A stretch of DNA of 64,000 nt, taken from contig NC_047066.1 in the NCBI RefSeq assembly GCF_902459465.1, positions 1,798,001-1,862,000 of the forward strand, read 5' to 3'. This stretch comes from Asterias rubens. Taxonomy: Eukaryota. Position 1 is the stretch's first letter. Each line of letters opens with the position of its first letter. Of the stretch, positions 36,097 through 46,719 are shown one piece after another. The translations under genes were made by a program, and so were the position numbers. A model generated the notes under the pieces. The model was not told where the DNA came from. It searched no databases and was given only the letters and a program-made list of their open reading frames with translations.

Positions 36097-37386
36097 AATT
36101 AACATTTTGTTTTGCTTTGTGGTCGTCGGTCAAAAAAAAAAAAAAAAAAAAATCGTGATCGAGTGAAATTATTGCATTTCTTTAAATATACCTGATGCAC
36201 ATGATGTCATATCAGTAGGGCGCCCTCTCACTTAGATATCAACAAGCTGTCGTTGGCCAAACCTCGGCTGCGGGTCACAATTTGTGGCTTTTGATTTTTC
36301 GTCATCGTTTTCTTTCATTATTATCTCGCATCCATCAGGACGACCAATTGAGCTCAAATTTGTACAGGTTTGCTAATCTGTGCATGTTGAAATACACTAA
36401 GAGAGAAGACTGGTCTTTGACATTTACCAATAGTGTTCAATGCCTTTAATAAGTTTTGAGCACTTTCAATGAGTGTTAAGTTGATCAGCTTGAATAGAAT
36501 TTCGTCTAACGTAAGGTCACCAGTCTACACCAAAAACCATTACAATATTTATAGTCACGATCATTAAATACACAAAATATATGAAAGTATAGAAAGTTGC
36601 AGCCATGGGGGTAATGGGTGTGATTGGGGGTCGGGAAGAGTAGTTTGAAGTTTTGTGTAATATTATCGAGTTTTTCTGGCCTCTTTTGGCTCTCTTTTTA
36701 AGCTTATTTATCATTTTAAGTTCCCATTGTAGGTCATATAATACAAACCAAATAACTGTTTGTAATATTAAGTTAATGCCTCTTAGTAGAAAAGTTTGAA
36801 TATACAGAATTTTCATCAAATGTTCCCACTTCTGTTTTTGTTTTACTTTTTGTATTCACTTTCAGAGAAGTAATTATACCTTCATTTTTTAAACAAAGTT
36901 TGCTTGAATTTTGTTTTGCTGATCTTTTATTTATAAGAGAAATATTGAGGAAAAAATATCGATCATTCATTCATTTTTCTACTTTTAGTAAATTAATTTT
37001 GGAGACCTCTTACTGGATTTCTAGAGCTGACAAAACAGTCACGTACAATGTTTATGTTTTGTGTGGCCAACCATAATAAACTAGAGAGACAAAATTTCCC
37101 TTTTTAGTGCAAAAGTTATGTACATTATAAAGTTATCATCGCTTAGTTCTTTTTGCAGCCCTTTTATAGGTTTTCTTGCACAGTTTCGGCAAATGAGTGG
37201 CCAATTTAAACACCATACATAGTTGTATGATATGCGAATGTTGTTAATCTTCAGTTTTAGAATAAAACTACATTTAAATTTATTATTATGCTGTTCTATG
37301 TGTGATGATTTCTTAACGAGAACTTAGCCTAAACTAGGAAAGGTTGACATTCCTAAAATCATTCGTAGTTGTCAACTGGTTTCTAG

Positions 37387-37596
37387 TAGTCTAGGTTCCT
37401 AGACCATTGGTGTTGCGTGGTCACACACTGTAATGAACGAACGCTAGCGGGCGCTCTGTTTCTATGATTTAGGATTAGAGAAACAGAGCGCCCGCTAGCG
37501 TTCGTTCATTACAAGCGTGTACAGTTTTTGCCGTGCATAATCGGAACGTTCGTTGTGTGTGACCACGCAACACCAATGGTCTAGGAACCTAGACTA
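37387..37596. mobile_element. 210-bp foldback MITE with 9-bp TSD (GGTTTCTAG)
   Basis: Perfect 42-bp TIR TAGTCTAGGTTCCTAGACCATTGGTGTTGCGTGGTCACACAC and a perfect internal 35-bp stem. TSD at 37378-37386 and 37597-37605; empty paralogous site at 42838-42846. Confidence 0.93.
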
Positions 37597-38218
37597 GGTT
37601 TCTAGTTGATATCGGATTAAATTCTAACTGCTTCTGATTACTTGCGTCTGTAATACTTTGATTAATGAGAGGATACCAATTTTATGAATATCTGACTTAA
37701 AGGCAGTGGACACTAATAATAAATAACTGAGCTTTCGAAAACACACCAACATTTGCTAACAATTGCAACAAGCATTGAGTGATTGTTGTTGTTGTTGAAA
37801 TGTGTTGCGAAAACCATCAATCTCGTGTTAAGCCATCTTTCCTTGTTGAGAATGAGTTGCACGTCACGTCCTTGTTATTATTTTTTTGTCAATGTCATTA
37901 TAACGACTGTTTTATCCGGGTCTGGCTCAAGTCCAAAATCAATCCTCGTCCACAGTACAAGAGCCTGGTTGAAGGTCTTTCCCACGGCAATCTCTATAGA
38001 CTCCCCGAGTTCCTGGTTCAACCCCTCTTATACGTTTTAACGGATATTTTATCTATGAATTCAGGTCAGCTAAAAACAGCGTATCAGGAAGAAAAACAAA
38101 CTTAAACGCAGGCACCATCTGTTCAATAAGGATCTAGCTGTGGCTCATTCTCATCTAAACATTTCTACTCGATTTAGCAACGGAAGAAGTCGTGTTTTGT
38201 ATTTGCAGTTTGAGCGCA

Positions 38219-41186
38219 ATGGCCTTGTTTATCCGTTCACTCTTGGTCGCTCTGATCGTGAAGTCTCAAGTTGAGCTACAAGTTGAAGCTTCCAGCAACC
38301 ACAGAACGGTTTCATGTGAGCTACAAACAAGTAGTAAGATAGACGAGTTGAGGCTTATAGTAGAAAACTACCTCGTCATTCTTGACGATGAAGTCAGAAA
38401 CACACAAGATCTGGTGAAAGAGTTACAGGGTGCAGTATTGACCAACCAAGAAAGGGCCACCTCTGAGCAAGAGGAAACACGTCGAATGGTTAGTGAGTTG
38501 CAGGTTGCGGCATCAACCAACCAAGAAAGGGCCACCTCTGAGCAAGAGGAAACACGTCGAATGGTTAGCGAGTTGCAGGGTGCAGTATCGACCAACCAAG
38601 AAACAACCACCTCTGAGCTGGAGGAAACACGTCGTATGGTTAGTGAGTTGCAGGGTGCGGTATTGACCAACCAAGAAACAACCACCTCTGAGCTGGAGAA
38701 AACACGTCGTATAGTTAGTGAGTTGCAGGGTGCAGTAGCGACCAACGAAACAACCTCTGCGGTACAGGGCATAAGACGACAGCTAGAACAGCTGCAAGGC
38801 TCTCTATTTCCATTGGTGCGAGACCTTCATGTAAGATGTAAGTTATATTTATTTACAGTCACCGAAACACCGACGTTCTTTTATTTTTTTAAATATTTAT
38901 TTATAATATTTTTAATAATATAAATACGCATGGAGTTTGTCAGCCAGTGTACAGAATTAAACAAATATAGAAACAATTTCGAAGAATCACACCACATTTC
39001 TAAGACAACCAATCACACAATCGTAAAGAGAAAGTATTAAAAAAAGAAAAGACGAAAACAAAATCTACGGTTGACAATTTTGTTGGTAAGGTCGAGCAGG
39101 GTCATAGTAGGAGTGACATTGTTTTTTTTTTATCGCAAGGCATCTTAAATGGGTCAAAAACATGTTCAGACTTAATCATCTGTTTACAAAATACACGTAG
39201 GATTACGAGAATTTGTTAATTGTTTTATTTTCATTTGTTATGTTTACATACTTGTACAGTTGCCTTTAAGGATTGCTCGGAAGTTCTTGCGAGGGGTGTA
39301 TCAACCAGTGGTGTGTACACGGTTCAACCTCTATGCTCCAGTGAAGCTTTCCGAGTATACTGTGATATGGAAACAGACGGTGGTGGATGGACGGTAAGAT
39401 AACACCCTATAAGAATGAGAGTACTCGTCTCTAAGAATTTGTAAATAAGAAGAAGCTTGATAAAGTTGAAGAAGTCCGGAGTTTTAAAACCCCCATGTTC
39501 CCTTGATAGGTTTTCCAGAGGCGCCAAGACGGCAGTGTAGATTTCTATTTGGACTTTGCTAACTACAGCCGGGGCTTTGGGAATCTGGAGGGAGAGTTTT
39601 GGCTCGGTAACGACAACTTGCACCGTCTGACCGCTCAGGGCGAGTACGAACTCCGCGTAGATCTCACAAAATTCGACAACGTTACTGGGTATGCCATCTA
39701 CGATACGTTCAGAATCGCCGATGTGAGTCACAACTACAGGTTGACAGTAGGAGGTTACTCAGGAAATACAGGTAAGACGCTGTAAGTGGAGACTCCGTGT
39801 AGCCAATACACACATCTTAATGGGTAAACTGTACCCATCGCTATTACCGACAGGTTTAACCATTACTTTTTGTGATTGCTGTCAGTAATTGTCCATGGAA
39901 GACAGCAAAGCATAGAACATCGTACTGTCTAAGAGTCGATTTAAATATGGCAACATCGTTTCTTTTAGACAGTGGTTCATACCAAGTGTCGGTGAATGCT
40001 GACCCAAGGAATAACCAATACTTGTCAAACATAACAACCGTAATAGTCCATATACAAATGTTACAGTAAAACTTTACTGGAACATGTCCTCTTCATCAAC
40101 TAATTTTTATTTTCCCCCTTTTTCGGTAACATAATATAGCAACTTTTCTAGGAGTTGTTTTCAAACTGTTAAAATTATGCTTTTTCCTTCATAAAACATT
40201 TCTGGAGGAACGTGGGAATCGGGTGCACTTAAAAACACATTTATTATCAGTTTTGTATATGTACATTTTTGTTAGCATATTTTTCCACCACATTTTGTAC
40301 TCCAAACTTTTTTTTCTATCATGCTATAAATACACACAACGTTTTTAGTTACAAGGTATATTGTAATTTTTGGGAGCTGACAAAAAAATGAATTTATTTA
40401 TATGTTAAACCCAGATGAAAAGAGCGGGGCTGGAGTTCTGTTTACATTATTCCTCAAATCCAGCCCAGCAGTGGAATTTGGGATTTTGGTATCCTTTGAA
40501 CCTCAAACATGAACAAAATAAATAAGCAACAAATTATTAGTAAACAATTGCAGTTTATCCATTTCTAAGCTTAGAAAAATTAAAGTGTCTTCTAAAATCA
40601 AACCATTTTACAATTTGGAGGCGAAAATGGTAAAAATAAAAAGTGTTCGCTTTTATATCCAGTTTCGATGGCAATTTATTTGACGCTAATGATAAGCTGA
40701 AAATTTGAAAAAAATACCCCAAAAGGAAACAATGAAAACAATGAACCTGTTTTTATGTATATAGATTGTGAACATTATTTTACTTCACTTCTCCCAATAT
40801 ATCCCAGCTCCAACTGATAAATTTGTTCCTAATCACACCTTATCGACCTAATGTTAGAAACGACTAATGTTCTAAGTTTATCCTCCTGCCAACATCACAT
40901 TTTACACGTCTGACTATAGGGCTACGTGTGTTATCTTTCAGGAGACTCGTTATCAGCTCACAATAACATGGCCTTTACGACCAAAGACCGAGAATACGAT
41001 GACAGTTCACGTAACTGTGCCGTGTATCGCAAAGGAGCCTGGTGGTACCGTTATTGCACCGACTGTAATTTGAACGGAAGATACTTCAATGAGGCCACTT
41101 ACAACATAAAAAGAATTATGTGGAATGGCTTTTCGGGAAACCTCTCACTCAAAAGAACTGAGATAAAAATTAGAAGAAAACTGTAG
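38219..41186 (+). CDS. Fibrinogen-related domain protein (FReD; ficolin/angiopoietin/tachylectin-like), copy 1, 419 aa, 4 x 25-aa coiled-coil repeats
   Basis: Exons 38219-38837, 39260-39393, 39510-39771, 40942-41186(TAG). Signal peptide [14 protein letters not shown]; FBG motifs [69 protein letters not shown]. Confidence 0.93.
38440..38760 (+). repeat. Coding tandem repeat, 75-bp (25-aa) unit x 4 plus a partial unit, FReD copy 1
   Basis: TNQE(R/T)(A/T)TSE(Q/L)[11 protein letters not shown](G/V)A(V/A)(S/L). Confidence 0.95.
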
Positions 41187-41439
41187 TCCTTACTAGGTGG
41201 ATAGAAAAATCTCCTTAAATAATCACCTGATCACTTCATCTTATTTAGTTTCTAGTAATTTTTTTGAACAATAATAATTATACACTGAAACTTAAAAAAT
41301 AATGTCAAACATATAATTAAATGTGAACGAACTTTTAATGCAATGGATAAATGAGGCATATATTAATGTGCTGGTGCTTGACCAACTAGTGTAAATCTTT
41401 GTTCGGGGTGCCAGTCGAAAGCCATACGACTGCAGCCGT

Positions 41440-41636
41440 ATAGACGATATGACCTCTGACGTCACTCGAAAACCATAACATGATTCGCGCGCAGACCGCC
41501 GGGCAAAAGCTTTGTGTTTTGGCAGCCCGCTAGAAAGTGTCTGCAATCTTACCATGACTACGCGTCATTTTGCCCGGCGAAACATGACGTTGTCAACGGA
41601 GGGCGGTTTGAATGTAAATATAGGTCACATCGTCTA
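41440..41636. mobile_element. MITE-like element present in duplication unit 1 only
   Basis: Inverted repeats ATAGACGAT(A/G)TGACCT (16/17) and GCCGGGCAAAA; lies within a ~500-bp block absent from unit 2. Confidence 0.6.
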
Positions 41637-42257
41637 TGGCCAGGGATCACAGTCAGATTTACGATACAACATAGGAACCGGCAGCCAGGGGATCACTTAA
41701 AGGAAGTCGTTGGTTCAAATCCCACTCTAGTCAAACTTGCTGTGTTCAACCCAAGTCATGTTCTGTGTTTAACCAGCCAGTTTCCCTTGTGGTTTATTAT
41801 TTGACAAAATGAGAAGAAGAAAATAATCAAACACAAAAACTGTTACTGACAGAGGTGTCAGTGTTCAATGTTGCAATCGAATTTAAACAAAACTAATTGG
41901 TTGAGGGGGAGAGGGACTTCACAAGCTATTTGTTCGATTGTAAATCAGAGAGCTTAATATTTATCTGTTTTGTGATTACTATGTATGTCGAACAGGGCTC
42001 GACTACTTTCTACTGGCCTCGTCTTTTAATATATTGATTGGAAAAACAGATAATTGCAATTAGGCACGACAGACATTTCTCTGTTTAATTTGTATTTTCA
42101 AGTATTGGATATGAATAATTATTGGATTGGGTCTGCTTATACAAAATCGGGGTCGCTCTATTCAAACCTTAATTACGAATTATGTCAAATAGTGGACAAT
42201 TTGTTCATACCTGACCCGGGGAGTTTTCGGAGTGAATAAACTGAGATGATGTATATA

Positions 42258-42654
42258 GGTTTTCTCGGTCAATTTCGGCAAATGAGCAGCCGATTTAACC
42301 ACCAAGCTATTCAATTTCGTGCGGAATCGAATGCTACTCAACTGTCATTCGATTTCGTTTTATGATTTGAGTCGGATGTAATGTTGCGTCAATCGATTTA
42401 ACAAAATAATCATTCAATTTAACAATTTATCAAAGCAGCATCCAAATTCGCAGACGCTTCTTGAGGCGTAAAAGAATGACGCTATGCTAAGTTGAACAGA
42501 GTGCTAGAGGAATTTGACACGACTCAAAACGCGAAATTGAATTGCAAAATTCTGAATTTGAAACGCAGTAACAACTGGAAAGGCAAAACAGTTTTAATTC
42601 GAACGCATGAAAATGAAATTGACTGCTCATTTGCAGAATTTGACCGAGAAAACC
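42258..42654. mobile_element. ~400-bp MITE (TIR GGTTTTCTCGGTCAA.TT..GCAAATGAGCAG, TA-type flanks)
   Basis: Inverted termini; a second full copy at 49527-49933 and a truncated copy at ~37169-37215. Confidence 0.85.
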
Positions 42655-43455
42655 AATAATAACTTTGCAGTGGTAAATATAGCTGTATGATATGCAAATG
42701 TTTTTAATCTTCTGTTTTAGAATAAAACTACATTTAAATGTATTATTATGCTGTTCTATGTGTGATGATTTCTTAACGAGAACTTAGCCTAAACTAGGAA
42801 AGGTTGACATTCCAAAAATCATTCGTAGTTGTCAACTGCTTTCTAGTTGATATCGGATTAAATTCTAACTGCTCCTGATTACTTGCGTCTGTAATACTTT
42901 GATTAATGAGAGGATATCAATTTTATGAATATCTGACTTAAGGGCAGTGAACACTAATAATAATAAATAACTGAGCTTTCGAAAACACACCAACATTTGC
43001 TAACAATTGCAACAAGCATTGAGTGATTGTTGTTGTCGTTGAAATGTGTTGCAAAAACCATCAATCTCTTGTTAAGCCATCTTTCCTTGTTGAGACTGAG
43101 TTGCACGTCACGTCCTTGATATTATTTTGGTCAATGTCATTATAACAACTGTTTTATCCGGGTCTGGCCCAAGTCCAAAATCAATCCTCGTCCACAGTAC
43201 AAGAGCCTGGTTGAAGGTCGTTCCCACGGCAATCTCTACACTCGAGTTCCTGGTTCCACCCTTCTTATACGTTTTAACGGATATTTTCTCTATGGATTCA
43301 GGTCAGCTAAAAACAGCGTATCAGGAAGAAAAACAAACTTAAACGCAGGCACCATCTGTTCAATAAGGATCTAGCTGTGGCTCATTCTCATCTAAACATT
43401 TCTACTCGATTTAGCAACGGAAGAAGTCGTGTTTTGTATTTGCAGTTTGAGCACA

Positions 43456-46400
43456 ATGGCCTTGTTTATCCGTTCACTCTTGGTCGCTCTGATCGTGATG
43501 TCTCAAGTTGAACTACAAGTTGAAGCTTCCAGCAACCAGAGAACGGTTTCATGTGAGCTACAAACAAGTAGTAAGATAGACGTGTTGAGGCTTATAGTAG
43601 AAAACTACCTCGTCATTCTTGACGATGAAGTCAGAAACACACAACATCTGGTGAAAGAGATGCAGGGTGCAGTATTGACCAACCAAGAAAGGGCCACCTC
43701 TGAGCAAGAGGAAACACGTCGAATGGTTAGTGAGTTGCAGGGTGCAGTATCGACCAACCAAGAAAGGGTCACCTCTGAGCAAGAGGAAACACGTCGAATG
43801 GTTAGTGAGTTGCAGGTTGCGGCATCAACCAACCAAGAAAGGGCCACCTCTGAGCAAGAGGAAACACGTCGAATGGTTAGTGAGTTGCAGGGTGCAGTAT
43901 CGACCAACCAAGAAAGGGCCACCTCTGAGCAAGAGGAAACACGTCGAATGGTTAGTGAGTTGCAGGTTGCGGCATCAACCAACCAAGAAAGGGCCACCTC
44001 TGAGCAAGAGGAAACACGTCGAATGGTTAGTGAGTTGCAGGGTGCAGTATCGACCAACCAAGAAACAACCACCTCTGAGCTGGAGGAAACACGTCGTATG
44101 GTTAGTGAGTTGCAGGGTGCGGTATTGACCAACCAAGAAACAACCACCTCTGAGCTGGAGAAAACACGTCGTATAGTTAGTGAGTTGCAGGGTGCAGTAG
44201 CGACCAACCAAGAAACAACCACCTCTGAGCTGGAGGGAACACGTCGTGCAGTTAGTGAGTTACAGGTCGCAGTAGCGACCAACCAACAAACGGACACCTC
44301 CGAGGTACAGGGCATAAGACGACAGCTAGAACAGCTGCATGGCTCTCTATTTCCATGGGTGCTAGACATTCAGGGAAGACGTAAGTTTTATTTATTTACA
44401 GTCACCGTAACAATAAATTTACTATTTATTTATCATATGAATACGCATGGAATTTGTCAGCCATTGTACAGAATTAAACAACTGTAGAAACAATTTCGAA
44501 GAATCACACCACAACTCTAAGACAACCAATCACACAACCGTATAGAGAAAGTAGAACAAAAACAATTTGTTGGTAAGGTCGAGCAGTGTCATATAGAAGT
44601 GAAATTGTTTTTTTTTTAACGCAAATCTTCCATACCATGGAGGTATCTTAAATGGGTCAAAACATATTTAGACTTAATCATCAGTTTTAAACATACACGT
44701 AGGATTACAAGAATTTGTGTGTATTTTTTTTATTTTTTTTATTTTAACATACTTGTACAGTTGCCATTCCAAAGGATTGTTCTGAGATTCTTGCGAGGGG
44801 TGTATTAACCAGTGGCGTGTACCTGGTTCAACCTCTAGACTCCGGTGAAGCTTTCCGAGTATACTGTGATATGGAAACAGACGGTGGTGGATGGACGGTA
44901 AGATAACACCCTATAAGAATGAGAGTACTCGTCTCTAAGAATTTGTAAATAAGAAGAAGCTTGATAAAGTTGAAGAAGTCCGGAGTTTTAAAACCCCCAT
45001 GTTCCCTTGATAGGTTTTCCAGAGGCGCCAAGACGGCAGTGTAGATTTCTATTTGGACTTTGCTAACTACAGCCGGGGCTTTGGGAATCTGGGGGGAGAG
45101 TTTTGGCTCGGTAACGACAACTTGCACCGTCTGACCGCTCAGGGCGAGTACGAACTCCGCGTAGATCTCACAGACTTCGACGACGTTACTGGGTATGCCA
45201 TCTACGATACGTTCAGCATCGCCGATGTGAGTGACAACTACAGGTTGACAGTAGGAGGTTACTCAGGAAATACAGGTAAGACGCTGTAAGTGGAGACTCC
45301 GTGTAGCCAATACACACATCTTAATGGGTAAACTGTACCCATCGCTATGACCGACAAGCTTAACCATTACTTGTATTAGTGATTGCTGTCAGTAATTGTC
45401 CATGGAAGACAGCAAAGCATAGAACATCGTACTGTCTAAGAGTCGATCATGTTTTAAATGATGGCAACATCGTTTCTTTTGGACAGTGGTTCATACCAAG
45501 AGTCGGTGAATGCTGACCCAATGAATAACCAATACTTGTCAAACGTAACAACCGTAATAGTCCATGTACAAATGTTACAGTAAAACTTTACTGGAACTTG
45601 CCTCTTCATCAACTAATTTTTATTTTTCCCCTTTTTCGGTAACATAATATAGCAACTTTTCTATGAGCTGTTTTCAAACTGTTAAAATTATGCTTTTTCC
45701 TTCATAAAACATTTCTGGAGGAACGTGGGAATCGGGTGCACTTTAAAACACATTTTTTATCAGTTTTGTATATGTAAATATTTGTTAGCACTTTTTTACC
45801 ACCACATTTTGTACTCCAAACTTTTTTTCTATCATGATATAAAAGAAATATACACACAACGTTTTTATTTACAAGGTATATTGTAATTTTTGGGAGCTGA
45901 CAAAAAAATGAATTTATTTATATGTTAAACCCAGATGAAAAGAGCGGGGCTGGAGTTCTGTTTACATTATTCCTCAAATCCAGCCCAGCAGTGGAATTTG
46001 GGATTTTGGTATCCTTTGAACCTCAAACATGAACAAAATAAATAAGCAACAAATTATTAGTTAACAATTGCAGTTTATCCATTTCTAAGCCTAGAAAAAT
46101 TAAAGTATCTTCTAAAATCAAACCATTTCACAATTTGGAGGCGAAAATGGTAAAAATAAAAAGTGCTCGCTTTTATATCCAGTTTCGATGGCAATTTATG
46201 TGACGCTAATGATAATTTTAAGCTGAAAATCTGAAAAATTAGCCAAAAGGGAACAATGAAAACAATGAACCTGTTTTTATGTATATAGATTGTGAACATT
46301 ATTTTACTTCACTTCTCCCAATATATCCCAGCTCCAACTGATAAATTTGTTCCTAATCACACCTTATCGACCTAATGTTAGAAACGACTAATGTTCTAAG

Positions 46401-46719
46401 TTTATCCTCCTGCCAACATCACATTTTACACGTCTGACTATATGGCTACGTGTGTTATTTTTCAGGAGACTCGTTATCGTACACCGATAACATGGCCTTT
46501 ACGACCAAAGACCGAGACAGCGATGTCTGGAGTCCTGTTAACTGTGCCGTGGATCGCAAAGGAGCCTGGTGGTACCATAGTTGCACCTTATGTAATTTGA
46601 ACGGAAGATACTTCAATGAGGCCATTCGCAACAAAGAAGGAATTAGGTGGAATGGCTTTTCGGGTCGGCTCTCACTCAAAAGAACTGAGATGAAAATTAA
46701 TAATAATTATACACTTTGA
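43456..46719 (+). CDS. Fibrinogen-related domain protein (FReD), copy 2, 525 aa, 8 x 25-aa coiled-coil repeats
   Basis: Exons 43456-44380, 44761-44897, 45014-45275, 46466-46719(TGA). Same architecture and FBG motifs as copy 1. Confidence 0.93.
43677..44305 (+). repeat. Coding tandem repeat, 75-bp (25-aa) unit x 8 plus a partial unit, FReD copy 2
   Basis: Same unit as in copy 1; exon A is 306 nt longer than in copy 1. Confidence 0.95.

What the first reader, a model, noticed from the sequence alone, without database searches (positions are those of the whole stretch)
40942..46719. Tandem FReD paralogs with near-purely non-synonymous divergence concentrated in the ligand-binding exon
Seen (manual codon alignment): last exon 40942-41171 vs 46466-46698 has ~20 amino-acid replacements plus a 1-codon indel in ~78 codons, against only 2-3 synonymous codon changes ([69 protein letters not shown]). 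Exon C has 5 replacements (four to or from charged residues towards acidic/neutral: K>D, N>D, R>S, H>D; plus E>G) and no synonymous change. The 116-bp intron before it is identical. Known: the last exon encodes the FBG P subdomain with the Ca2+ and ligand sites, and invertebrate FReDs are diversified pattern-recognition or allorecognition-type molecules. Inference: strong diversifying selection on specificity, with recent duplication or gene conversion homogenising the rest; a candidate fast-evolving recognition system.
Basis: partly seen in the sequence, partly recalled or inferred. Interest (0 to 1): 0.82.

Follow-up and report, generated by a model that had tools for sequence, protein, structure and literature searches.

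The report
Hypervariable binding pocket in starfish lectins
Two neighbouring starfish (Asterias rubens) genes for secreted fibrinogen-type lectins are nearly identical except at about twenty codons around the calcium and sugar-binding pocket; about a dozen sister genes show the same pattern, which fits strong selection for new binding specificities, as in immune-recognition gene families.

Summary
The window is Asterias rubens chromosome DNA holding two intact tandem FReD genes: g1 (38219-41186, 419 aa, the same as an NCBI protein) and g2 (43456-46719, 525 aa, no protein record found).

- **Last exon:** it differs at 20 codons plus a 1-codon indel, with 2 purely synonymous codons. Exon 3 has 5 replacements and no synonymous change. 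Intron 2 is 116/116 identical.
- **Against the neighbouring intron:** last-exon divergence is 14.8%, against 3.2% in intron 3 (p=2e-10).
- **Other clade genes:** the excess holds in all pairs among g1, g2 and four A. amurensis genes of the same clade.
- **Younger pairs:** it is far stronger in two younger A. rubens pairs. In one, 27 of 51 differences across 5.5 kb lie in the 248-bp last exon.
- **Codon site models (15 genes):** about 22% of last-exon codons have omega about 8.5 (LRT 140, p=4e-31).
- **Where the selected codons lie:** they align to the Ca2+ loop and acetyl (S1) pocket of FIBCD1.
- **Control:** a single-copy ortholog pair keeps this exon at 1.6% divergence, against about 9% in its introns.
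- **Flanks:** these show concerted evolution and a mosaic history.

This is a new member of a known kind, the diversified invertebrate FReD lectins. The ligands, the expression of g2 and the source of the mutations remain open.

The parts
38219..41186 (+). g1: intact 4-exon FReD gene (exons 38219-38837, 39260-39393, 39510-39771, 40942-41186), 419 aa
   Evidence: Model. The translation is identical to NCBI 'fibrinogen-like protein 1 [Asterias rubens]' P0002. Pfam PF00147 E=6e-72.
43456..46719 (+). g2: intact 4-exon FReD gene (exons 43456-44380, 44761-44897, 45014-45275, 46466-46719), 525 aa
   Evidence: Model. Exons 2, 3 and 4 hit PF00147 profile positions 1-44, 45-131 and 142-219. No identical protein record was found.
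40942..41171 (+). g1 last-exon core (P subdomain). Variable patches at about 40955-40963, 40994-41012, 41025, 41049-41054, 41061-41063, 41097-41120, 41136-41141 and 41165.
   Evidence: Nucleotide alignment, codon list, mapping to FIBCD1 residues.
46466..46698 (+). g2 last-exon core. Variable patches at about 46479-46487, 46518-46539, 46552, 46576-46581, 46588-46590, 46624-46647, 46663-46668 and 46692.
39394..39509 (+). g1 intron 2, identical (116/116) to g2 intron 2 (44898-45013)
   Evidence: The GT..AG splice joint 44896/45013 is seen in RNA reads, but these cannot be assigned to one copy.
39772..40941 (+). g1 intron 3, 96.8% identical to g2 intron 3 (45276-46465). Used as the neutral yardstick.
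39510..39771 (+). g1 exon 3: 5 replacements and 0 synonymous changes against g2 exon 3 (45014-45275). D>N, S>R and D>H are derived in g1; E>G is derived in g2.
41172..41269 (+). 98 bp present in g1, and in all other family members examined, but deleted in g2 between 46698 and 46699. It holds the ancestral ...IRRKL stop; g2 ends ...INNNYTL instead.
38420..38746 (+). 75-bp (25-aa) tandem repeats in g1 exon 1, 4.4 copies (stalk region)
43657..44304 (+). 75-bp (25-aa) tandem repeats in g2 exon 1, 8.6 copies

Best explanation
**What the genes are.** g1 and g2 are tandem paralogs of an Asterias-restricted subfamily of fibrinogen-related (FReD) proteins. A. rubens has at least 13 members, on chromosomes 2, 4, 5 and 22. 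Each protein has a hydrophobic N-terminus that looks like a signal peptide, a stalk of 25-residue repeats and a C-terminal FBG domain. They are probably secreted lectins.

**What is happening to them.** About 20 codons of the last exon form the Ca2+ loop and the walls of the ligand (S1) pocket. These codons are driven apart by positive, diversifying selection, so each gene carries a unique pocket. The rest of each gene is kept similar by recent tandem duplication and by gene conversion or recombination between copies.

**Shown here:**
- the divergence island in the last exon;
- its recurrence in other gene pairs;
- site-specific omega well above 1;
- its position by homology to FIBCD1;
- the mosaic, concerted history of the flanks.

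**Inferred only:** that the selected trait is ligand specificity in immune-type recognition.
For: **1. Island of divergence.** The last-exon core is 13-18% diverged in all six pairs among g1, g2 and the syntenic A. amurensis genes A and B, against 3.2-6.4% in intron 3 (p from 1e-3 to 2e-10). Adding two more A. amurensis clade genes (P0082, P0061) gives the same result.

**2. Replicates elsewhere in the genome.**
- C4_2551 vs C4_2538: 51 mismatches in 5495 bp, 27 of them in the 248-bp last exon (14 replacement and 2 synonymous codons). The rest of the 5.5 kb is 0.46% diverged (24/5249).
- C22_4957 vs C22_4986: intron 3 has 1/721 differences, exon 3 has none, and the last exon has 27.

**3. Site models (my own GY94 code).** Its M0 likelihoods reproduce IQ-TREE's exactly.
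- Last exon: M0 omega=1.48. Under M2a, 22.6% of codons have omega=8.5, with LRT 139.9 (p=4e-31).
- Exons 2-3: M0 omega=0.36.
- The LRT stays at 149-164 on two other topologies.

**4. Hypervariable codons defined in advance.** At the 17 last-exon codons defined as hypervariable from the 11 other paralogs, dN is 0.63-1.02. dS for the FBG domain is 0.07-0.11.

**5. Position in the structure.** Codons with posterior above 0.95 align to FIBCD1 residues 378, 380, 381, 396, 397, 399, 404, 405, 412, 413, 416, 429, 436, 438 and 444; residue 415 scores 0.84. In FIBCD1:
- Ser397 and Asn399 carbonyls bind Ca2+;
- Tyr405, His415, Tyr431, Ala432 and Trp443 form the acetyl pocket;
- Glu398 and Asn413 touch the glycan (PMC3908420).

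**6. Control.** The single-copy ortholog pair C22_10146 / P0080 has introns about 9% diverged, but its last exon is only 1.6% diverged (1 amino-acid change, every hypervariable position identical). The exon is therefore not intrinsically hypermutable.

**7. Concerted and mosaic flanks.** Informative sites in intron 2, exon 3 and intron 3 favour (g1,g2 | A,B). Those in intron 1 and exon 2 favour (g1,B | g2,A). The 3' flank joins g2 with A at about 1%.

**8. No sign of decay.** All ORFs are intact in both species, and the framework codons of the last exon are under constraint (omega0 about 0.1).
Against: - Pairwise dN/dS for the g1-g2 last exon alone is 1.5 and not significant.
- Replacement divergence at the selected codons is about 0.45-0.5 whatever the flank divergence (0.1% to 13%). 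It does not build up with time. This needs either a substitution rate 100 or more times the neutral rate, or old pocket motifs surrounded by recently homogenised sequence. The data do not separate these two.
- Most replaced codons differ at 2-3 nucleotides even in pairs whose flanks differ by under 1%. That is awkward for stepwise point mutation and is a known source of false positives in codon models.
- Gene conversion among paralogs also inflates site-model LRTs.
- Outside the hypervariable sites, this clade's lineage-specific changes run about 3:1 nonsynonymous to synonymous, which is close to neutral.
- g1 changes otherwise invariant residues: the Ca2+ ligand D393>E, N394>Y and EG>KR.
- g2 has lost the ancestral C-terminus and has no protein record.
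- RNA coverage of both variable exons was under 2x in the runs laid.
- No ligand or expression data exist.
Confidence: 0.72

Rival explanations
1. A mutational process rather than selection creates the island. Either short templated conversions bring in patches from donors not sampled here (other alleles, unassembled copies), or a targeted mutator acts on the pocket codons. Selection then only filters out non-functional variants.
For: - Multi-nucleotide codon replacements occur in pairs whose flanks differ by 0.1-0.5%.
- Divergence at the hypervariable codons is independent of flank age.
- The last exon's tree conflicts with the exon 2-3 tree by 70 lnL units.
- C4_2551 and C4_2564 share an identical 3' half of the exon, differing at one codon, but differ at 11 codons in the 5' half.
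- FREP diversity in snails is ascribed to gene conversion plus point mutation (PMC12074976).
Against: - Each of 8 patches has 12-15 distinct nucleotide states among 15 genes.
- No whole-exon or multi-patch donor was found in the genome. The nearest last exons are 7% or more different.
- A PHI test for recombination within the exon is not significant (p=0.16).
- Kappa is about 1.1 in the last exon against 2.2 in exons 2-3, so there is no transition or deaminase signature.
- The control ortholog keeps the same exon nearly unchanged.
- The changes avoid framework codons and synonymous sites, which a blind mutator would not do.
Confidence: 0.14
2. Relaxed constraint: one or both of g1 and g2 are decaying duplicates, and the last-exon differences are neutral drift in a dispensable domain.
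For: - g2 lacks the ancestral stop and C-terminus (98-bp deletion) and has no protein record.
- One DNA contig of another run carries a 4-bp insertion after 46551.
- g1 alters the conserved DxD Ca2+ motif and the EG motif.
- The nonsynonymous to synonymous ratio of lineage-unique changes is about 3:1.
- RNA coverage is very low.
Against: - Neutral decay cannot exceed the intron rate. Here replacement divergence per site is 4.9 times intron 3 overall, and 15 times at the predefined hypervariable codons.
- The changes are confined to the family-wide hypervariable positions (p=5.5e-5).
- Framework codons stay conserved.
- There are no stops or frameshifts in g1, g2 or the four A. amurensis clade genes.
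- The same pattern appears in annotated sister genes.
Confidence: 0.07
3. Assembly artefact: g1 and g2 are two alleles of one locus wrongly placed in tandem.
For: Long stretches are 97-100% identical.
Against: - A. amurensis, assembled independently, has two tandem genes in the syntenic position with the same orientation.
- The two units differ in repeat number (4.4 vs 8.6).
- Intron 1 is 13.5% diverged.
- The two units have different transposon insertions and different 3' flanks.
- Contigs from a DNA run match g2-specific intron 1 exactly.
Confidence: 0.02

Closest known systems
FIBCD1, ficolins (L-, M-) and tachylectin 5A: acetyl-group-binding FReD lectins with solved structures
   Same: - The FBG fold matches strongly by sequence: ficolin-2 E=1e-61, FIBCD1 E=2e-61.
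- Both disulfide cysteine pairs are present.
- The Ca2+ loop motif is D-x-D in g2 and E-x-D in g1.
- The conserved framework motifs GAWWY and NLNG are present.
- The variable positions here align to these lectins' S1 site and Ca2+ loop.
   Different: - The S1 pocket residues conserved from horseshoe crab to human (Tyr405, His415, Tyr431/Ala432, Trp/Tyr443) are the hypervariable ones here.
- g1 and g2 carry Arg, Thr, Ile or Lys, and Asn or Arg at those positions, so an aromatic acetyl pocket is not expected.
- The stalk is a 25-residue repeat, not collagen (ficolins) and not a membrane anchor (FIBCD1).
Biomphalaria glabrata FREPs (IgSF + FBG immune lectins)
   Same: An expanded invertebrate FReD family. 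Its diversity is ascribed to gene conversion and point mutation, and it is thought to match variable parasites (PMC12074976).
   Different: - FREPs carry IgSF domains, and from my own knowledge the diversified region reported there is the IgSF domain, with somatic variation claimed.
- Here there is no IgSF domain.
- Here the variation is germline-encoded, lies between paralogs and sits in the FBG pocket.
Mosquito and Drosophila FREP/FBN expansions
   Same: Tandemly duplicated FBG-domain genes, with reports of positively selected sites (PMC1242226, PMC2811201; listed, not read in full).
   Different: I found no report there of near-identical duplicates whose only divergent segment is the pocket-coding exon.
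MHC class I/II peptide-binding exons with homogenised introns (my own knowledge: Hughes & Nei 1988; Cereb et al. 1997)
   Same: The evolutionary pattern is the same: contact codons have dN above dS and show patchwork motifs, while flanking introns are homogenised by recombination or conversion.
   Different: The fold and function are unrelated. Here the contrast is between tandem paralogs, not alleles, and polymorphism has not been examined.
Sea urchin Sp185/333 gene clusters
   Same: An echinoderm family of clustered, highly similar, rapidly diversifying genes linked to immunity (PMC3091723, PMC3342357; listed).
   Different: The proteins are unrelated. Sp185/333 diversity is a mosaic of sequence 'elements' and repeats, not point-like pocket codons in a folded lectin domain.

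Membership tests
Fibrinogen-related domain proteins (Pfam PF00147, FReD/FBG) | A full-length match to the Fibrinogen_C profile above the gathering score | tested here: met
   g1: E=6e-72, profile positions 3-219 of 221. g2 exons 2, 3 and 4 cover profile positions 1-44, 45-131 and 142-219.
Fibrinogen-related domain proteins (Pfam PF00147, FReD/FBG) | Two conserved disulfide pairs: A-domain Cys-Cys, and P-domain Cys401-Cys414 in FIBCD1 numbering | tested here: met
   KDC...VYCDM and NCA...WWYxxC are present in g1, g2 and all paralogs. g1 and g2 have an extra Cys in CNLNG, and g1 has one more in exon 2. Pairing was not tested.
Ca2+-dependent FReD lectins (ficolin / FIBCD1 / TL5A type) | Ca2+ site: Asp393 and Asp395 side chains plus two loop carbonyls (397, 399) | tested here: inconclusive
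   g2 has D-S-D and g1 has E-Y-D at positions 393-395. Loop residues 396-399 are hypervariable, and loop length varies by one residue. Metal binding was not tested.
Acetyl-group-binding FReD lectins (ficolin / FIBCD1 / TL5A type) | Conserved aromatic S1 pocket: Tyr405, His415, Tyr431, Ala432, Trp/Tyr443 | tested here: not met
   g1 and g2 have Arg405 and Thr415. At 431/432 they have Ile (g1) or Lys (g2), and at 443/444 Asn (g1) or Arg (g2). The alignment is uncertain by one residue at these last two positions. Across the subfamily these positions are the positively selected ones (PMC3908420).
Biomphalaria-type FREPs | One or two N-terminal IgSF domains upstream of the FBG domain | tested here: not met
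   No IgSF domain was found. Exon 1 encodes a signal-like N-terminus and 25-aa repeats, with no Pfam hit above its curated cut-off in g1 and only a borderline match for g2's exon 1 (PF23671 'HTH_70', 31 bits against a cut-off of 27, no single stretch passing on its own).
Gene families under diversifying selection with concerted evolution of flanks (an evolutionary pattern, not a protein family) | Site-specific omega above 1 at contact residues, neutral flanks less diverged than the contact exon, and discordant trees along the gene | tested here: met
   M2a vs M1a LRT 140-164. The last exon is 2-109 times as diverged as its flanks. Quartet topologies change along the gene.
Immune pattern-recognition receptors | Expression in immune cells or induction by challenge, and binding to microbial ligands | not testable with these tools
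   RNA runs gave under 2x coverage on the variable exons and could not be assigned to a copy. No binding data exist.

The most novel reading that the evidence does not exclude
The pocket codons may be diversified by a dedicated process rather than by ordinary mutation plus selection. Candidates are templated codon-patch replacement or a targeted mutator, acting in the germline or in somatic immune cells. Alternatively, the family may be a highly polymorphic self/non-self or gamete-recognition system with old pocket alleles kept by balancing selection. Either would explain why pocket divergence is already saturated in tandem copies whose other 5 kb differ by under 0.5%.
Probability: 0.1. Interest if true: 0.9.

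Novelty: new member of a known kind. Interest (0 to 1): 0.6.

Why it matters
Invertebrates lack antibodies, and how they obtain diverse recognition molecules is an open question in comparative immunology. This family gives a clean, germline-encoded case in a deuterostome.

- It has a dozen or more genes that share a nearly invariant scaffold, down to synonymous sites and introns.
- Each gene has a unique set of residues at the positions that form the ligand pocket in human FIBCD1 and the ficolins.
- Because the scaffold is constant and the structural template is solved, the specificity code can be tested directly by expressing the FBG domains, running them on arrays and swapping patches.
- The very young pairs, with flanks under 1% diverged, allow a direct test of whether selection alone can produce such islands or whether conversion or another mechanism supplies the variation.

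Tried and rejected
- **Pairwise dN/dS per exon for g1-g2 only.** Omega is 1.5 for the last exon and not significant. This test is too weak alone, so I replaced it with intron-calibrated tests, orthologs and site models.
- **Donor search for micro-conversion.** DNA and protein searches of the whole genome and patch-state tables found no donor. g2's resemblance to C22_4927 ([12 protein letters not shown]) involves only scattered codons, so I treated it as chance or convergence.
- **PHI recombination test within the last exon.** Not significant (p=0.16), probably because the sites are saturated.
- **RNA evidence.** No run is on record as an RNA holder. Raw RNA reads gave under 2x depth on the variable parts, up to 13x on g1's 3' end and up to 6x on g2's. 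The exon 2-exon 3 joint is seen but cannot be assigned to g2, g1 or another paralog. Expression is therefore unresolved.
- **Extent of identity in the C4 and C22 clusters.** The extent of near-identity beyond 5.5 kb is unknown.
- **Global alignment of the control pair's introns.** This gave inflated distances because of indels, so I replaced it with BLAST HSP identities.
- **Deaminase-type signature.** Kappa is about 1.1 in the last exon, so there is no transition excess.
- **Literature searches.** I found no paper describing this Asterias subfamily.
- **Structure prediction.** Not run. Sequence matches to solved FReD structures at E=1e-61 made it unnecessary, and model coordinates cannot be read with these tools.
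Full report
**What is there.** The window is G000:C5:1798001-1862000 of a 417.6-Mb genome. The species is Asterias rubens. Two genes lie head to tail on the + strand, 5237 bp apart. Both have canonical splice sites and open frames.
- g1: exons 38219-38837, 39260-39393, 39510-39771, 40942-41186 (419 aa).
- g2: exons 43456-44380, 44761-44897, 45014-45275, 46466-46719 (525 aa).
- Exon 1 encodes a hydrophobic N-terminus and 25-residue repeats, 4.4 copies in g1 and 8.6 in g2.
- Exons 2-4 encode a complete FBG domain, and the last exon covers PF00147 positions 142-219.

**Checking the observation.**
- Last exon: 20 replacement codons, one 1-codon indel and two purely synonymous codons in 78 codons.
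- Exon 3: five replacements and no synonymous change.
- Intron 2: 116/116 identical.

Divergence along the unit is very uneven.

| Segment | g1-g2 identity |
|---|---|
| Upstream | 96.5% |
| Intron 1 | 86.5% |
| Exon 2 | 91% |
| Intron 2 | 100% |
| Exon 3 | 97.7% |
| Intron 3 | 96.8% |
| Last exon | 83% |

- The last-exon differences form about seven patches of multi-nucleotide change, separated by perfectly identical stretches.
- Against intron 3 the excess is 4.7-fold (34/230 vs 37/1166, p=2e-10).
- After codon 78 g2 has lost 98 bp (g1 41172-41269). The ancestral ...IRRKL stop is replaced by ...INNNYTL.
- One correction to 'near-purely non-synonymous': Nei-Gojobori path averaging gives Sd of about 5 and Nd of about 29. 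Omega is 1.5, which is not significant for this pair alone.

**The family.** The genome holds at least 150 FReD last exons. A closer subfamily shares intron homology with g1 and g2. Its members lie in tandem clusters on C4 (2.54-2.59 Mb and 3.29 Mb) and C22 (4.93-4.99 Mb), with single genes on C2 and C22 and two pseudogenes.
- In an alignment of 15 intact genes the framework of the last exon is almost invariant, even at synonymous sites.
- A fixed set of positions carries 4-8 different residues.
- The g1-g2 differences fall on those positions, which were defined without g1 or g2 (p=5.5e-5).
- Proteins at least 70% identical to the subfamily were found only in Asterias.

**Orthologs.** A. amurensis has a syntenic tandem pair: A = P0001 and B = P0004 in L066. 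It has a second pair of the same clade about 45 kb away: P0082 and P0061 in L068.
- Among these six genes the last exon is 12-18% diverged in every pair, while intron 3 is 3-7%.
- NG86 for the last exon gives dN 0.17-0.24 and dS 0.03-0.12.
- At the predefined hypervariable codons dN is 0.63-1.02.
- Informative sites change topology along the gene. Intron 2 to intron 3 groups by species, which indicates concerted evolution after speciation. Intron 1 and exon 2 group g1 with B and g2 with A. The 3' flank joins g2 with A.
- The duplication is therefore older than the species split, and the near-identity of the middle of g1 and g2 is secondary.

**Replicates and control.** Two younger A. rubens pairs show the same thing more starkly.
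- C4_2551 vs C4_2538: 51 mismatches in 5495 aligned bases, 27 of them in the 248-bp last exon. These fall in 16 codons, 14 of them replacements.
- C22_4957 vs C22_4986: 1/721 differences in intron 3, none in exon 3 and 27 in the last exon.
- These are 24-fold and 109-fold excesses over the flanks.
- Control: the single-copy orthologs C22_10146 and P0080 have introns about 9% diverged. Their last exon is 1.6% diverged, with all hypervariable positions identical. The exon is therefore not a general mutational hot spot.

**Formal test.** I coded GY94+F3x4 site models. Their M0 likelihoods equal IQ-TREE's to two decimals.

| Data | M0 omega | M2a result | LRT | p |
|---|---|---|---|---|
| Last exon (75 codons, 15 genes) | 1.48 | 22.6% of codons at omega 8.5 | 139.9 | 4e-31 |
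| Exons 2-3 | 0.36 | 6% of codons at omega 3 | 9.9 | 0.007 |

- The last-exon result persists on two other topologies (LRT 149 and 164).
- The last-exon data fit the exon 2-3 tree 70 lnL units worse than their own tree. This is more evidence of mosaic history.
- Caveats: branch lengths were fixed up to a single scale factor, site posteriors are NEB rather than BEB, and both gene conversion and multi-nucleotide changes can inflate such tests.

**Where the sites are.** g1's FBG domain matches ficolin-2 and FIBCD1 at E about 1e-61. Using the FIBCD1 alignment (chain index + 235) and the published structure (PMC3908420):
- The selected codons align to residues 378, 380, 381, 396, 397, 399, 404, 405, 412, 413, (415), 416, 429, 436, 438 and 444.
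- Two further hypervariable columns were dropped for gaps. One lies in the 396-399 loop and one at 431/432.
- These positions are the Ca2+ loop (carbonyls of 397 and 399; Glu398 contacts glycan), the pocket walls (Tyr405, His415, Tyr431/Ala432, Trp443) and the cis-peptide residue Asn413.
- The pocket residues conserved in FIBCD1, TL5A and the ficolins are therefore the ones that vary here.
- g1 and g2 have Arg405 and Thr415, with Ile or Lys, and Asn or Arg, at the other two pocket positions. A classical acetyl pocket is not expected.

**Mechanism.** The best-supported reading is diversifying selection on ligand specificity, acting on a scaffold kept uniform by recent duplication and gene conversion. 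Two features remain unexplained.
- Replacement divergence at the selected codons is about 0.45-0.5 whether the flanks differ by 0.1% or 13%.
- Most replaced codons differ at 2-3 bases even in the youngest pairs.

This needs one of three things: substitution 100 or more times faster than neutral, old pocket motifs embedded in repeatedly homogenised sequence, or a templated or targeted source of variation.
- The first is possible under continuous selection in a very large population.
- The second fits poorly, because framework segments only 10-35 bp long are identical between the patches.
- For the third, I found no donors. Each patch has 12-15 distinct states among 15 genes, the PHI test gives p=0.16, and there is no transition bias. 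One clear case of half-exon sharing does exist, between C4_2551 and C4_2564.

**Status of the two genes.** None of the six clade genes has a stop or frameshift, and none stands out as decaying.
- g1 changes the first Ca2+ ligand (D>E) and the conserved EG motif.
- g2 has the C-terminal deletion and no protein record.
- One DNA contig from another run shows a 4-bp insertion after 46551.
- RNA coverage was too low and too ambiguous to show that either variable exon is expressed.
- A role in immunity is inferred from the family (FREPs, ficolins). It has not been shown.

**Verdict.**
- Observation: confirmed.
- Novelty: a new member of a known kind (diversified invertebrate FReD lectins under positive selection). 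The divergence islands are unusually sharp, and the selected sites map cleanly onto a solved pocket.
- I found no description of this Asterias subfamily in the papers searched.

Noticed in passing
L051 vs L053 (G000:C4:2551200-2556700 and 2537800-2543300); L056 vs L058 (G000:C22:4953300-4958800 and 4981700-4987200): These are sister tandem FReD pairs with even sharper divergence islands than g1 and g2. The C4 pair is 99.5% identical over 5.5 kb apart from 27 changes in the last exon. The C22 pair has 1/721 differences in intron 3 and 27 in the last exon.
   Followed up: partly
window 46551-46552 (g2 last exon) and 40957 (g1 variable codon): A contig from a DNA run (X1) carries a 4-bp insertion 'GATC' after 46551, which would shift g2's frame. 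The same run shows C>G at 40957, turning g1's Ala into Gly, the residue found in A. amurensis gene A. This may be allelic variation, but I could not check it further.
   Followed up: no
window 43456-46719 (g2): g2 has an intact 525-aa ORF, yet no identical or near-identical protein appeared in two database searches that did return g1 and other A. rubens paralogs. It may be unannotated or recorded as a pseudogene.
   Followed up: partly
window 41338-41854: A 517-bp insertion lies in g1's 3' flank and is absent from g2's. Its read depth is very high in both DNA and RNA runs, so it is a dispersed repeat or transposon. Reads that skip it (joint 41337/41855) probably come from g2's 3' UTR.
   Followed up: partly
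window about 37383-37600: A palindromic, MITE-like insertion of about 210 bp lies upstream of g1. It is absent from the matching place upstream of g2 and from A. amurensis.
   Followed up: no
window 38420-38746 and 43657-44304; A. amurensis P0001, P0004, P0061: The copy number of the 25-residue stalk repeat varies widely between paralogs and species, giving proteins of 419, 525, 470, 423 and 555 aa. The scan noted this separately as s1-178762.
   Followed up: partly
Proteins P0038, P0042, P0044, P0062, P0082 against P0002, P0006, P0008: The subfamily is modular. There are two unrelated N-terminal exon types: 'MALFIR/MGLFIR...' and a Cys-rich 'MEPACMKMT...CVCQPH...'. There are also two exon-2/intron-2 types. 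These are combined with the same exon 3 and 4 framework, even within one cluster, which points to exon-scale recombination.
   Followed up: partly
L068 (A. amurensis CP134971.1:13158586-13173628): A. amurensis has a second tandem pair of the g1/g2 clade about 45 kb from the syntenic pair. A DNA search of the A. rubens genome found only g1 and g2, so copy number differs between the two species.
   Followed up: partly
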